Shown here: piece after piece, positions 307 through 18,439 of the stretch | How positions within the stretch are numbered: the first letter of the stretch is position 1 | Layout: each line of letters begins with the position of its first letter | Origin: Antechinus flavipes | Taxonomy: Eukaryota | Direction: 5' to 3' | Length of the DNA: 33,000 nt | Assembly: GCF_016432865.1 (NCBI RefSeq) | Contig: NC_067404.1 | Location: 31,930,001-31,963,000, forward strand | Notes under the pieces: model-generated | What the model saw: only the letters and a program-made list of their open reading frames with translations | Told to the model about the DNA's origin: nothing | Databases searched by the model: none | Program-made: the position numbers and the translations under genes

Positions 307-669
<363 letters not shown>

Positions 670-7982: not shown

Positions 7983-8404
7983 TCCCCCTCCTACTTTGTA
8001 GAGGGGAAATAGTTGGTTGAATGGCAGGTGTTGTCTCCTGGAACAGGCTGCTTAAATCTGCCCTTCAAGGCTCAGAAGAGGAGATATTATACAGGATTGT
8101 GGAAACACAGAGATCAGGACCCTGAGCAGGGACAGGTCACAAGGGAAGTAAGTCTAGCTAGGAAACTACAGGAGTGGTCCCTGGGTCACTAGGGGTTGAC
8201 ACGAAGTCCCGGGGCACTCTGTAGACTGGGGAGCTGGAAAAAAGGAAGGAAAATGCAGGAGGGCAAAAGGTGGGGACTAATGAGAGATACTTTAGTCCAG
8301 CCAGAGACCGACCCTGCCTGGGGACAGGTATACAGGATTCATCTCCTCCCTTCCCAAATGATGAAGTGAGGGATTTTGGGGTGCAGGCGATTATTTCGTC
8401 TTAC

Positions 8405-8512
8405 CTGAGAAGTCCAGCTACATCTTCCCCGAACATCTCTCGTATGCACCACTTTTAGACACTGACTGATTGCCTTTTCCTCCATACTCTGAATACTGAG
8501 GCATGGGTAGTG
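8405..8512 (-). CDS. VSIG1: Putative alternative (cassette) exon of VSIG1, a 36-aa in-frame insert in the IgV domain
   Basis: Acceptor CCCATTTCTGCCCAAATGCAG|CAC and strong donor CAG|GTAAGA. It is 108 nt, phase 0/0 like the host intron, and stop-free: HYPCLSIQSMEEKAISQCLKVVHTRDVRGRCSWTSQ. It resembles the insert of the long human isoform as recalled from memory (not verified here). Confidence 0.8.
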
Positions 8513-8929
8513 CTGCATTTGGGCAGAAATGGGCCAGTCGGAGAGTTGAATGCTCAACAGATATTGCCACAAAACCCAGAAGCCCCTTCATGCAGCCGCT
8601 TCAAAATGGCACCTTCCATGGCACTCCCACTGTTTATAGGGATGCCATTTTCACTTTCTACTCCCAAACCCACACCTATATACACTGCTCTGGGAATTGC
8701 CATTTGAAAAGGGTTAACTCCATTTCTTATGATCAATTTTTTTTAGCATGAGCTAATCTTTAAACGTCTTAAGAGTTTCGCTTCCAGTATTCTTTCCACT
8801 CTGCCCTACGCTCCTGCGTCCCAGAGAAGTTATAATCCAATGGGACCCGAGCCACAAATCTCCTCTGTAACAACTGGAACAAGAAGATCTCCAATAAGGT
8901 GGCGTTGGTCAGATCCCAAGTAGCCCATT

Positions 8930-13330: not shown

Positions 13331-14809
13331 AAGGTAAGTGTAAGATAATGAAGTATCATCAACTAGCTTCTTTTCCTCTTTATTGAATTGCTCTCTAATC
13401 ATTTCCTGCATATAAAACTTTTTTTCCAGCCTCTTACACCAATGCTGGTTGCAATTTATAGTCTTATATGTCTGGGGTCTGAGAGGTTACATGACTTGCC
13501 CAGGGTCATACAACCAAGATACATCAGAAACTGGACTTGAACCTAGTTAACCCTGACTTTGAAGGCAGCTCCCCACCCACTATTACATGCAAGTTTTGTC
13601 TTTCTCAGTTCTAAACTCCCAGTGACCAGGACCTATGTTGTTTCTTTAACTCCCTGATCCTGAGCGCAGCGCTAGGCCCAGAGAAAGTACTCAACAAATA
13701 CTTGTTGATAGATGGCATGCAAATCTTAAAGGGGAAATTGCTAGCTGATCTGGTTTCTCAGCCTTCAGTGTGGCTAGGAGGGGCCTTTCCTCAGATCTCC
13801 ATCTTGGCAGTAGCCATGACTTTGGACACCCTTACCCCCAGACTGTGGGGAGGGAATGGGCTCTGATGCTCCTATTTGGGACATTGCCTCTACTGTCCTG
13901 AGAATCCCTGAGGCCGGGGTCTGCCTCTTGCCTCAACTTTGTATCTCCCTAGAGACAGGGTCCAGTAAAGAAATGTTTGTCAAAAAGAAATGTTTGTCAA
14001 ATGACTGTGGGACTCTTTGCCATAGGAGGAAGACCAAAAATTAAAGGAGATTTTAGTAAGCCAAAGATGTATTTCCTAAACCAGGAGTCTCCAAAGTTGG
14101 GGAAGACATGCCATGATGGCAGGGGGACTATGGGATGATCTCAAGAAGTGTGGGATCAGTTAGTGGGAGGGTGGGAAAATGGATCCTATCCCACATTCTC
14201 TACAGTTCTTAACCAAGGGGCTAGTCTTCAACACAACCACATCTATCCCTCACCCATGGGGATCCAGCTTTCCTCTCCCTCTACCATCAGTCCCTCCAGA
14301 TTGTTATAGATTAATCATCTGGCACCAAGAACAGCAACTGCGCTGGTACTGTTAGGAAAATCCCACCCCCAGCCCAGCATCCCCAACCCCTGCCCCTTTC
14401 ACTTCAAGGCCAGGGCAGTGACTGCTGAATAAGAGCAGTCATTTGTCCTCCTTTTTTGTTTTAGCCGACATATACTGGATCGCACAATAATACCTGAATT
14501 TACTTGATCAATGTATATTTCTTGCCAGTGCGCACTCCAAAAACGTTTTACCGATGGGCTACACAACCAAGCAACTGCCTCATCTACTTGTGGGTATGAT
14601 AAGCCCGCCTAGTTACCCAGATCCTAATAAAGGTGAAACCATTTGCAAGTGAAGATATGTGCTGACACAATGCTCTTAAACTAAACAGTCCACACAGTTG
14701 TTTCTCTAATTCAGCCTTTGGCTCCTGCTCTCAGAGAAACCAAGCCCACTAAGCACAAACTCTAAGCCAAACCTACTGAACTGTACCAGTCTTGGAATAT
14801 AGTCCTTAC

Positions 14810-14973
14810 CGAGATTATATTGAATTTCTTGATGTGGTAGAAGGACCACTGGATGGTAAACTGGCTCGTAGAGGGGGCGGTACTGGTGTATGTGCAGAGC
14901 AGAGTGGCGTCCATCCCAGCCGTCACGTTCACCATCTTCACTGGGATGGTCACCTCCACAGAGGTGACAGAGC
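14810..14973 (-). CDS. VSIG1: VSIG1 exon encoding the N-terminal half of the IgV domain
   Basis: Acceptor CTTTCAG|G and donor TCG|GTAAGG; 164 nt. Encodes GSVTSVEVTIPVKMVNVTAGMDATLLCTYTSTAPSTSQFTIQWSFYHIKKFNIIS, with the B-strand Cys, C-strand Trp and an NVT sequon. Closely matches recalled human VSIG1 ([27 protein letters not shown]...IQWSFFHKKE). Confidence 0.95.
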
Positions 14974-15969: not shown

Positions 15970-17340
15970 TGGACTCTTAGCTGCCAAATCCAAAGGCCTT
16001 TTCTCAATCCTCATTTTCCTGGATGTCTCGGTGGTCCTTGACATATTATCATCCCTTTCTCTTTAATGCTCTCTTCCTTCTACACTTCTGCAATATTTCT
16101 CTGTCTCTATATCTGTCTCTGTTTCTATATCTGTCCCTCTCTTTTTCTCCTAGTTTTCCTCTTATTTATCTGATACTCCTTCTCGTCTAACCTTCTCTGT
16201 GTCCTCTTCTCTTTTCCCTCTATACCACTTCACTTGGTGATCACATCAGCTCCCATGGATTTAATTCCCATCTCTGTTGATGATTCTGAAATTTATCAAC
16301 CATATCCCAAACTCTCTGCTGACCTCTAATCTTACATCTCCAACAGCCTTTCAGATACCTCGAATTCACTCTCCAATCTTAAACTCAATGTGTCCAAAAC
16401 AGAACTCACCATCTTTCCTCCTGAGCCCTAAACCCCATTTCCTGTTATTGTAGAGGGAACCGCCATCCTCCCAGTTTTTCAGGCTCACAACCCAAGAGTC
16501 ATTCTAGTCTCTCCCCTCTCCAGTCCATTCTCCATTCAAATCATTGAAAGTGATTTTCTCCTGGTCATCTTCAGCAATGAGATGAACCAAATCAGTTCCA
16601 ATGGAGCAGTAATGAACTGAACCAGCTACGCCCAGTGAAAGAACTCTGGGAGACGACTAAGAACCATTACATTGAATTCCCAATCCCTATATTTTTGCCG
16701 CCTGCATTTTGGATTTCTTTCACAGGCTAATTATAGAATATTTCAGAGTCCGATTCTTTTTGTACGGCAAAATAACGGTTTGGTCATATATACTTATTAT
16801 GTATCTAATTTATATTTTAATATATTTAACATCTACTGGTCATCCTGCCATGTAGGGGAGGGGGTGGGGGAAGGAGGGGAAAAATTGGAACAAAATGTTT
16901 TGCAATTGTCAATGCTGTAAAATTACCCATATATATAACTTGTAAATAAAAAGCTATTAAAAAAAAAAAAAAGAAAGTGATTTTCCTAAAGTGTAAGTCT
17001 AATCATGTCACCCCTACTACTCAATAAACTCCATCGGCTCCCTATTGTCTTCAGAAGCAAATACAAAATGCTCTGTTTGGCATTCAAGGTCTTTTATTGC
17101 CCACTCCCTCCTGTTTTTCCAGTCTTATTACACCTTCCTCCCCCACACATACTTTTCAATCCAGTACCAGCCACTTCTTAGCTATTCCACAAATGAGACC
17201 CCTCCGTTTCTCTCGCTCTGGCCATTCTCTCTAACTGTCCCCCATTCCTGGAGCTCTCTCCCTTTTCTGCTCCAACCATTGACTTTCCTGCTTGCCTTTG
17301 AGTCCCAACTGAAAACCCACCTTGTAGGAAGCCTTCTCTC
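15970..17340 (+). mobile_element. L2 body fragment, interrupted by an L1
   Basis: Pyrimidine-rich plus strand with CATCAGCTCCCATGGATTTAATT, CTTAAACTCAATGTGTCCAAAACAGAACTC and CATGTCACCCC...CTCAATAAACTCC L2 motifs. Confidence 0.8.
16559..16972 (+). mobile_element. 5'-truncated young L1 (3' end plus poly(A))
   Basis: G-rich 3' UTR tract, AATAAA and poly(A). 13-bp TSD GAAAGTGATTTTC at 16546-16558 and 16973-16985. Confidence 0.92.
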
Positions 17341-17400: not shown

Positions 17401-17905
17401 GGTGATATGGGATATGGTGGATAAATTTCAGAATCATCAACAGAGATGGGAATTAAATCCATGGGAGCTGATGTGATCACTAAGTGAAGTGGTATAGAGG
17501 GAAAAGAGAAGAGGACACAGAGAAGGTTAGATGAGAAGGAGTGTCAGATAGATAAGAGGAAAACTAGGAGAAAAAGAGAGGGACAGATACAGAAACAGAG
17601 ACAGATATAGAGACAGAGAAATATTGCAGAAGTGTAGAAGGAAGAGAGCATTACAGAGAAAGGGATGATAATATGTCAATTATATATATATATATTATAA
17701 TATAATAATTTCATATTATATATATATAATGAACTATATTACATATAAATATATTAAATACATGTCAATTAATGTACACATCTATGGATATAAGTGAAAT
17801 CCCATTATTTTATGAATTTCAAAACTCCCTTCTGAGAAGGGGTCACTAGCTTTGGAACATCACCAAATGGGTCCATATAGCACAATTGTTAAGAATTCTG
17901 TCCTA

Positions 17906-18390: not shown

Positions 18391-18439
18391 CTAGAAGGCC
18401 CACCATGAAGAGAATCATCCTTGAAACCACGAAAATCAT
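18391..18439 (-). CDS. VSIG1: VSIG1 first coding exon (signal peptide)
   Basis: Minus strand reads ACCAAG-ATG (A at -3), then MIFVVSRMILFMVGLL-G and the donor G|GTGAGT. It is 49 nt, phase 1, hydrophobic, and resembles the human VSIG1 leader MVFAFWKVFLILSCLAG (recalled). It joins the next exon in frame. Confidence 0.9.

What the first reader, a model, noticed from the sequence alone, without database searches (positions are those of the whole stretch)
8405..8512. Intact three-cysteine cassette exon that would insert 36 aa into the middle of the VSIG1 IgV domain
Seen: a 108-nt stop-free segment with CAG| acceptor and CAG|GTAAGA donor, phase 0/0. It sits in the 14.2-kb phase-0 intron between the half-V exons, so inclusion gives ...[50 protein letters not shown]... 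in frame. The polypyrimidine tract is short and weak, as expected for a regulated exon. Established: CTX-family members encode the V domain on two split exons. Recalled but unverified: a long human VSIG1 isoform carries a 36-aa insert at this junction (about HSSCLSTEGMEEKAVxQCLKMTHxRDARGRCSWTSE), with Cys at the same positions 4, 18 and 31. Inference: retention of frame, length and all three Cys between marsupials and placentals would mean purifying selection on an overlooked isoform. It would be a splice switch placing a Cys/His mini-module in the C-C' region of the adhesion domain, possibly altering homophilic binding, forming disulfide-linked dimers, or acting as a redox- or metal-sensitive loop.
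Basis: partly seen in the sequence, partly recalled or inferred. Interest (0 to 1): 0.78.

Follow-up and report, generated by a model that had tools for sequence, protein, structure and literature searches.

The report
Known VSIG1 alternative exon, conserved in marsupials
The 108-base segment is a real exon, the marsupial counterpart of the already published extra "exon 3" of human VSIG1 (the minor variant 1), and it is conserved mainly at the DNA/RNA level, so it is not an overlooked protein module.

Summary
Observation confirmed. On the minus strand, 8512..8405 is a stop-free 108-nt, phase 0/0 segment with a weak acceptor and a CAG|GTAAGA donor. It lies in the 14,230-nt intron that splits the VSIG1 IgV domain.

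The window is Antechinus flavipes. The exon is orthologous to the 36-aa insert of VSIG1 long isoforms annotated in 48 placental protein clusters and in Sarcophilus (100% identical), Vombatus and Dromiciops. A 2017 paper measured human variant 1 (with this exon) as the minor form in stomach and testis. So it is known, although the Antechinus gene model skips it.

New here:
- The synonymous rate in the exon is 6-7 times lower than in the flanking V-domain exons. dN/dS is about 1 and third codon positions show no excess change.
- About 85 nt of upstream intron are conserved.
- Pig has lost the exon (frameshift and destroyed donor). Muroid rodents lost the first Cys.
- AlphaFold places the insert inside strand C' as a low-confidence loop.

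Best reading: an ancient therian cassette exon whose conservation is largely RNA-level. Selection on the protein is not demonstrated. No RNA reads were obtained for this species.

The parts
8405..8512 (-). Cassette exon. It is 108 nt, phase 0/0 and 36 codons, and is orthologous to human VSIG1 'exon 3' (variant 1-specific).
   Evidence: It is 100% identical in nucleotides to Sarcophilus and 81-85% identical to placentals, against about 61-69% for the flanking exons.
8513..8597 (-). Conserved upstream intronic block that includes the weak polypyrimidine tract and the acceptor (catttctgcccaaatgcag).
   Evidence: Alignment A4. Identity to placentals is 0.60-0.62 here and below 0.30 further upstream. 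The acceptor context is conserved in all loci.
8399..8404 (-). Donor site gtaaga, with the exon end CAG.
   Evidence: Invariant in 9 of the 10 therian species read. Changed to ACAAGG in pig.
8456..8485 (-). Nearly invariant purine-rich exon block (ATGGAGGAAAAGGCAATCAGTCAGTGTCTA, codons 10-19). It is a candidate exonic splicing enhancer; that role is an inference.
   Evidence: All third codon positions are unchanged across the nine species with an intact exon. The enhancer role is not tested.
8405..8431 (-). Nearly invariant 3' exon block (CGGGGAAGATGTAGCTGGACTTCTCAG, codons 28-36, peptide RGRCSWTSQ).
   Evidence: There is one synonymous difference (ACT/ACC) among the nine species with an intact exon.
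14810..14973 (-). VSIG1 exon 2, the first half of the IgV domain. It ends in phase 0.
   Evidence: The peptide is identical to Antechinus flavipes VSIG1 (P0127).
381..579 (-). VSIG1 exon 3 of the short form, the second half of the IgV domain.
18391..18439 (-). VSIG1 exon 1 coding part (MIFVVSRMILFMVGLL plus the first base of Gly17).

Best explanation
The segment is the Antechinus flavipes orthologue of the alternatively spliced 108-nt cassette exon of VSIG1, called 'exon 3' in human and present only in transcript variant 1 (the long isoform).

The exon predates the split between marsupials and placentals. It has a weak acceptor and a near-consensus donor. Two almost invariant purine-rich stretches lie inside it, and about 85 nt of conserved intron lie upstream.

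Inferred mechanism: inclusion depends on exonic and intronic splicing signals. Those signals constrain synonymous sites as strongly as replacement sites, so the exon is conserved as RNA.

When the exon is included, 36 residues are inserted two residues into strand C' of the IgV domain. This lengthens the C-C' connection from about 5 to about 40 residues, on the sheet that related CTX/CAR/JAM-family proteins use for homophilic contact (family knowledge). The product is probably a minor isoform with an altered or disabled adhesive face (inference).

Shown: orthology, splice-site and frame conservation, depressed dS, and loss in pig. Inferred: enhancer-dependent regulation and the effect on adhesion.
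For: Orthology and annotation:
- phmmer with the 36-aa peptide against 1.84 billion representatives finds only VSIG1-locus sequences (E 1e-10 to 2e-6). These include full-length long isoforms with the insert at the identical junction.
- 48 placental clusters are named VSIG1 isoform X1 or precursor.
- The Sarcophilus, Vombatus and Dromiciops models include the exon. The Sarcophilus insert is 100% identical to the window peptide.
- Window 1-20439 is 100% identical to the A. flavipes assembly. That species' own 320-aa model skips the exon.

Sequence conservation:
- Splice sites are conserved in 9 of the 10 therian species read.
- Identity peaks on the exon (0.81-0.85) and falls to 0.53 within 30 nt past the donor. 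It is 0.60-0.62 over 85 nt upstream.
- Synonymous changes per site on the tree are 0.33 in the cassette, against 1.98 and 2.20 in the flanking exons. Replacement changes per site are 0.40, against 0.85 and 0.53.
- Pig carries a 1-nt deletion and a donor changed from GT to AC. It has 11 mismatches in 78 nt against horse, while horse and cheetah differ at 2 of 108. The low rate elsewhere is therefore selection tied to use as an exon.

Structure:
- In the short form the V domain has pLDDT 80-89, and the junction S70|I71 lies in strand 69-76.
- In the long form the insert has pLDDT 32-34.
Against: - No transcript evidence was obtained in this species. Three raw RNA runs of the source species gave 0 reads on the stretch, which is no test. 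The one contig from a related species was unspliced.
- Marsupial support rests on gene models whose evidence I could not inspect.
- The splicing-enhancer role of the purine-rich blocks is inferred from sequence only.
- dN/dS of about 1 means a protein function is not demonstrated.
- Transcript-derived (Logan) full-length proteins in the searches all lack the insert.
Confidence: 0.85

Rival explanations
1. One reading: conservation reflects purifying selection on a Cys/His mini-module of the protein, acting as a disulfide, redox or metal loop that changes homophilic binding.
For: - Cys18, Cys31 and S32-W33-T34 are invariant in 48 of 48 long isoforms, and H1, S16, L19, R25 and Q36 are too.
- The replacement rate in codons 10-36 (0.28 per site) is lower than in the flanking V-domain exons (0.53 and 0.85).
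- The frame is kept in 9 of 10 genomes, and the ruminant models differ by whole codons.
Against: - dN/dS is 1.24 on the tree and 0.7-1.7 in marsupial-placental pairs.
- Changes by codon position are 20/12/10. This differs from the flanking exons (89/75/197; p = 1.6e-4) and is compatible with a uniform spread.
- Cys4 is lost in Muroidea, which leaves two Cys.
- The exon is lost in pig.
- It is the minor isoform in human.
- The insert has pLDDT of about 33 and lowers confidence for the whole V domain.
Confidence: 0.3
2. In marsupials the exon is constitutive or predominant rather than alternative, and the Antechinus model that skips it is an annotation omission.
For: The Sarcophilus, Vombatus and Dromiciops RefSeq entries list only the form with the insert.
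Against: - The Antechinus flavipes model and a Sarcophilus-like metaclust protein lack the insert.
- The weak acceptor is conserved.
- In human the skipped form dominates.
- No reads were available to decide.
Confidence: 0.2
3. The conserved block is a non-coding element, such as an enhancer or another DNA or RNA element, that happens to be open in one frame. Exon use would be incidental.
For: - There is no coding signature in the substitutions.
- Conservation extends 85 nt into the upstream intron.
- Stop-free AG...GT segments are common by chance: 475 in this intron.
Against: - Conservation peaks on the exon and drops at the donor.
- AG and GTAAGA are invariant.
- In pig, loss of the donor goes with decay of the whole block.
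- Human transcripts with the exon have been measured.
- There is no Rfam match, and folding is no better than shuffled sequence (z = 0.34).
Confidence: 0.07
4. The segment corresponds to the testis-specific alternative first exon 1b of mouse Vsig1C, which lies in the same intron.
For: PMC3186807 places a 61-bp exon 1b with an internal promoter in intron 2.
Against: The published exon 1b primer maps at L005:18181-18200 in Mus caroli with 1 mismatch. That is 4.2 kb downstream of the cassette (13894-14001) and 3 kb upstream of exon 3.
Confidence: 0.01

Closest known systems
Human VSIG1 transcript variant 1 (long isoform, 423 aa) with 'exon 3'. Variant 2 (387 aa) lacks it.
   Same: - Same intron between the two half-V exons, same 36-codon length and phase, and same junctions.
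- 67% identity to the chimpanzee 423-aa precursor insert, with Cys at 4, 18 and 31.
- The variants are listed in NCBI and were quantified in PMC5543479.
   Different: - The marsupial sequence differs at about 12 of 36 residues, mostly in the first nine.
- Marsupial proteins have a much shorter cytoplasmic tail (356 aa with the insert).
- Inclusion level in marsupials is unknown.
Conserved alternative cassette exons as a class (named from established literature, my knowledge: Sorek and Ast 2003; Xing and Lee 2005; Yeo et al. 2005).
   Same: - Length is a multiple of three.
- Flanking intron is conserved for about 85 nt.
- The exon is more conserved than its constitutive neighbours.
- The synonymous rate is lowered and dN/dS is raised.
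   Different: The synonymous depression is strong, 6-7-fold over roughly 160 million years. That is nearer to what is reported for highly conserved regulatory exons than to the average alternative exon.
Small alternative exons inserted within Ig domains of adhesion molecules, for example the NCAM VASE exon (my knowledge).
   Same: An in-frame mini-exon is placed inside an Ig domain of a cell-adhesion protein and is expected to modulate binding.
   Different: It is unrelated in sequence and much longer (36 aa against 10 aa). No functional data exist for the VSIG1 insert.
CTX/CAR/JAM family of two-Ig adhesion proteins. The closest solved structure is CXADR D1-D2.
   Same: - The short isoform matches CAR ectodomains at E 4e-17 over residues 23-227.
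- The V domain is encoded on two exons.
   Different: The 36-aa peptide found nothing outside the VSIG1 locus in 1.84 billion representative proteins.

Membership tests
Orthologue of human VSIG1 variant-1 cassette exon ('exon 3') | Lies in the intron between the two exons that encode the IgV domain of VSIG1. | tested here: met
   The flanking exons are identical to Antechinus flavipes VSIG1.
Orthologue of human VSIG1 variant-1 cassette exon ('exon 3') | 108 nt, phase 0/0, and an insert at the ...S|I(Y/F)Y... junction. | tested here: met
Orthologue of human VSIG1 variant-1 cassette exon ('exon 3') | Significant sequence similarity to the insert of annotated long isoforms. | tested here: met
   E is 1e-10 to 8e-9 in a search of 1.84 billion proteins, with 67-100% identity.
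Orthologue of human VSIG1 variant-1 cassette exon ('exon 3') | Spliced into mRNA in this species. | tested here: inconclusive
   There were 0 reads in three RNA runs (no test) and one unspliced contig from a related species.
Conserved alternative cassette exon (class) | Conserved flanking intron and exon conservation above constitutive neighbours. | tested here: met
Conserved alternative cassette exon (class) | Both inclusion and skipping forms exist. | tested here: met
   In human, by qRT-PCR in PMC5543479. Many placentals have isoform X1 and X2 models. In marsupials the evidence is gene models only: Sarcophilus with the insert, Antechinus without.
Protein module under purifying selection | dN/dS clearly below 1 and an excess of third-position change. 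| tested here: not met
   The tree ratio is 1.24 and changes by codon position are 20/12/10.
Protein module under purifying selection | Reading frame preserved in genomes regardless of annotation. | tested here: met
   The exon is intact in 9 of the 10 species read. These include Cavia, where only the short form appeared in my searches, and Antechinus, whose own model skips the exon. It is broken in pig.
Structured RNA or Rfam family | Match to a covariance model, or folding energy better than shuffled sequence. | tested here: not met
   One search gave only a chance-level hit (E 0.49). One search gave z = 0.34.

The most novel reading that the evidence does not exclude
The exon is kept chiefly for an RNA-level role and not for its peptide. 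Its 6-7-fold synonymous constraint, position-independent substitution pattern and conserved upstream intron would mark a tightly regulated splice switch, or another function embedded in the RNA. Inclusion would mainly serve to disable or divert the adhesive IgV face of VSIG1 in particular cells, such as germ cells or tumours. Pigs, and possibly other cetartiodactyls, have dispensed with it.
Probability: 0.3. Interest if true: 0.5.

Novelty: already known. Interest (0 to 1): 0.27.

Why it matters
VSIG1 is a stomach and testis adhesion protein studied as a cancer marker, and almost all functional work uses the short form. This analysis shows that the long-form exon is at least as old as therian mammals, and that it is more conserved in nucleotide sequence than the constitutive V-domain exons around it. 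That argues the splice choice is regulated and biologically meaningful.

The substitution pattern warns that the peptide may not be what selection sees. The pig loss offers a natural knockout.

For annotation, the Antechinus flavipes gene model lacks an exon that its relatives' models include. None of this overturns current knowledge.

Tried and rejected
1. Mouse testis exon 1b as the same element: rejected. The published primer maps 4.2 kb away in Mus caroli.
2. Structured RNA, miRNA or snoRNA: no Rfam family reached threshold and folding is no better than shuffled sequence.
3. A conserved Rbfox-type TGCATG: it is present about 80 nt upstream in the three marsupials (window 8594..8589, minus strand) but has no counterpart at that position in the placental rows of the alignment.
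4. A conserved upstream ORF or start codon, as the bilby model and read-through ORFs suggested: the ATGs are not conserved in Mus and the frame is broken in Antechinus.
5. RNA evidence:
   - The run search had only 5 sampled words.
   - Three raw RNA runs of the source species gave no reads.
   - The 'RNA?' run X4 of a related species gave one unspliced 378-nt contig.
   - Neither junction partner fits in a 6,000-letter stretch together with the cassette, so joints could not be tested.
6. Non-therian origin: the peptide search found no non-mammalian protein. I had no way to fetch echidna, sauropsid or amphibian introns.

Handling notes:
- The window has no N.
- One read-through ORF (P0002) looks primate, possibly human. 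After it was listed I did not fetch its contig or use it further.
- No human contig was fetched. Human and chimpanzee entries were used only as database proteins in one alignment.

Full report
**1. The observation**

The minus strand of the window reads aaatgcag|CACTACCCA...ACTTCTCAG|gtaaga between 8512 and 8405. This is 36 codons with no stop, and the peptide is HYPCLSIQSMEEKAISQCLKVVHTRDVRGRCSWTSQ.

The upstream exon ends ...AATATAATCTCG|gtaagg with its last base at 14810. The downstream exon begins tctcag|ATATATTAT at 579. The acceptor is weak: pyrimidines make up 0.65 of positions -20..-4, with AAA at -8..-6. Exon 3 has 0.82. The donor is near consensus.

The bare pattern is not rare. The intron contains 475 stop-free phase-0/0 AG...GT candidates of 60-300 nt. 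All four candidates with a MAG|GTRAG donor share the single donor at 8405.

**2. Identity of the locus**

Window 1-20439 is 100% identical to the VSIG1 locus of Antechinus flavipes (GCA_016432865.2, CM028223.1). Exons 2 and 3 translate exactly to that species' VSIG1 model, P0127, which is 320 aa. That model joins ...KKFNIIS directly to IYYSVNG..., so it skips the cassette. The start codon is at 18439 on the minus strand.

**3. What the exon is**

A phmmer search with the 36-aa peptide against 1.84 billion representative proteins gave six hits (E 1.2e-10 to 2.3e-6), all from VSIG1 loci.
- Two are VSIG1 models with the insert at the same junction: a full-length long isoform (P0003) and a 735-aa fusion prediction (P0004).
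- Four are read-through ORFs of unspliced sequence.

A word search centred on the insert listed 48 placental clusters named VSIG1 isoform X1 or precursor. They span carnivores, afrotherians, primates, rodents, lagomorphs, bats, perissodactyls, pangolin, colugo, shrew, mole and ruminants.

A profile search also brought in marsupial RefSeq proteins. Sarcophilus harrisii (356 aa), Vombatus ursinus (358 aa) and Dromiciops gliroides (356 aa) all contain the insert. The Sarcophilus insert is identical to the window peptide. These proteins are short only because marsupial cytoplasmic tails are short.

For human, PMC5543479 states that NCBI lists variants 1 and 2 and that variant 2 lacks exon 3. It also reports that variant 2 is dominant in stomach, testis and MKN45 cells by qRT-PCR. 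Variant 1 was at least 2-fold higher in 4 of 69 lung adenocarcinomas. The chimpanzee 423-aa 'precursor' (P0054) carries HSSCLSTEGMEEKAVSQCLKMTHARDARGRCSWISE, while the human 387-aa entry lacks the insert.

**4. Conservation at the DNA level**

I fetched the gene from Sarcophilus, Dromiciops, Acinonyx, Trichechus, Mus caroli, Cavia, Sus, Equus and Sorex.

The acceptor context (catttctgcYcaaaYRcag) and the donor (TCTCAG|gtaaga) are conserved in all species except pig.

Identity of the window to placentals, by region:

| Region | Identity |
|---|---|
| Further upstream than -85 | below 0.30 |
| 85 nt upstream of the acceptor | 0.60-0.62 |
| Exon | 0.81-0.85 |
| First 30 nt after the donor | 0.53 |
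| Beyond +30 | about 0.3 |

The peak sits on the exon and ends at the donor. This fits an exon with regulatory upstream intron and does not fit a generic non-coding block.

**5. Kind of selection**

Pairwise Nei-Gojobori estimates between marsupials and placentals:

| Exon | dS | dN |
|---|---|---|
| Exon 2 | 0.9-1.3 | 0.34-0.44 |
| Cassette | 0.10-0.28 | 0.14-0.21 |
| Exon 3 | 1.4 to saturated | 0.17-0.26 |

The cassette ratio is 0.7-1.7.

Parsimony counts on a 9-species tree:

| Exon | Synonymous changes per site | Replacement changes per site | Ratio |
|---|---|---|---|
| Exon 2 | 1.98 | 0.85 | 0.43 |
| Cassette | 0.33 | 0.40 | 1.24 |
| Exon 3 | 2.20 | 0.53 | 0.24 |

Changes by codon position are 20/12/10 in the cassette against 89/75/197 in the flanking exons (chi-square p = 1.6e-4). 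The cassette pattern is compatible with a uniform spread (p = 0.14).

The exon is very slow at every position and carries no coding signature. The cause, however, is a depressed dS and not a raised dN.

The protein may still matter. Cys18, Cys31 and S32-W33-T34 are invariant in 48 of 48 long isoforms, and replacement change in codons 10-36 is lower than in the constitutive V exons. The data cannot separate this from nucleotide-level constraint.

Two nearly invariant stretches are purine-rich: ATGGAGGAAAAGGCA... at 8485-8456 and CGGGGAAGATG... at 8431-8405. I infer they act as exonic splicing enhancers that compensate for the weak acceptor. This is not tested.

No Rfam family matches, and the region folds no better than shuffled sequence.

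**6. Lineage losses**

- Cavia appeared only as a short form in my searches, yet its exon and splice sites are intact. Conservation is therefore not an artefact of looking only at annotated long forms.
- In pig (Sscrofa11.1) the exon has a 1-nt deletion that shifts the frame after codon 26, and the donor is ACAAGG. There are 11 mismatches in 78 nt against horse, while horse and cheetah differ at 2 of 108. Pig exons 2 and 3 are normal. The short pig isoform was found on 13 short contigs under 5 kb (sources include Logan), which I take for transcript assemblies.
- Other cetartiodactyl inserts are unusually divergent. Ovis lacks 3 residues, Moschus lacks 4, and Balaenoptera has R28W, G29E and S35C.
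- Muroid rodents replaced Cys4 and Leu5 (HGSHPNTEG and similar), leaving two Cys.

**7. Structure**

With similar alignment depth, AlphaFold2 models the short Antechinus protein with V-domain pLDDT of 80-89. It places the exon junction (S70|I71) inside strand C' (residues 69-76).

The long Sarcophilus protein keeps the Ig strands, but the insert (residues 65-106) has pLDDT of 32-34 and the V domain drops to 46-71. The insert is thus predicted as a long, unconfident C-C' excursion.

The nearest solved relative is the CAR D1-D2 ectodomain. In that family the GFCC'C'' sheet mediates homophilic contact (family knowledge), so an effect on adhesion is plausible but inferred.

**8. Transcript evidence in marsupials**

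The run search had only five sampled words. Three raw RNA runs of the source species gave no reads on 8189-8728, which is no test because the tissue is unknown and 6% of each run was read. A run of a related species gave one unspliced contig. The cassette and either partner exon are more than 6,000 nt apart, so joints could not be examined.

Among marsupial models, three include the exon. One (Antechinus) and a Sarcophilus-like metaclust entry skip it. The bilby model starts in the upstream intron and reads through the acceptor, which is probably an annotation artefact.

**9. Rejected alternative**

Mouse Vsig1C uses a testis-specific exon 1b in the same intron (PMC3186807). Its published primer maps 4.2 kb downstream of the cassette in Mus caroli, so the two are different elements.

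**10. Verdict**

The segment is a real, ancient (therian) cassette exon and is already known from human and annotated widely. It is missing from the gene model of this species.

The idea of an overlooked, protein-selected Cys module is not supported by the substitution pattern. Conservation is mainly at the nucleotide level, consistent with a regulated alternative exon.

The search of earlier findings never opened.

Noticed in passing
L008:48781-49011 (Sus scrofa NC_010461.5): The pig copy of the cassette is a dead exon. It has a 1-nt deletion and the donor GT is changed to AC. It differs from horse at 11 of 78 nt, while horse and cheetah differ at 2 of 108. Pig exons 2 and 3 are intact.
   Followed up: partly
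window 16038-16309 and 17408-17679: Two direct copies of a 272-nt sequence, 97.4% identical and 1.37 kb apart, lie inside VSIG1 intron 1. The origin is unknown; it could be a local duplication or an interspersed repeat.
   Followed up: no
window 8589-8594 (minus strand), about 80 nt upstream of the acceptor: A TGCATG (Rbfox-type) motif is conserved in Antechinus, Sarcophilus and Dromiciops. The placental rows of the alignment have no counterpart at that position.
   Followed up: partly
P0125 (Macrotis lagotis VSIG1 model, 321 aa): The bilby model starts at an ATG in the conserved intron block upstream of the cassette and reads through the acceptor. It lacks the signal peptide and exon 2, so it is probably a mis-annotation. 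In Antechinus the same stretch is in a different frame.
   Followed up: partly
L005:18181-18200 (Mus caroli): The published primer for the mouse testis-specific exon 1b maps here, 4.2 kb downstream of the cassette and 3 kb upstream of exon 3. Intron 2 therefore holds two separate alternative elements in mouse.
   Followed up: yes
P0103, P0110, P0119 and P0127 compared with placental VSIG1: Marsupial VSIG1 has a much shorter cytoplasmic tail, about 60 residues after the membrane helix. It lacks the long acidic Pro/Glu-rich repeat region of placental proteins.
   Followed up: no
P0074, P0076, P0085 (cetaceans) and P0043 (Perognathus): Several VSIG1 models are flagged LOW QUALITY PROTEIN. I did not determine where their corrected frameshifts lie. 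Together with the pig loss and the divergent ruminant and whale inserts, this hints at relaxed constraint in Cetartiodactyla.
   Followed up: no
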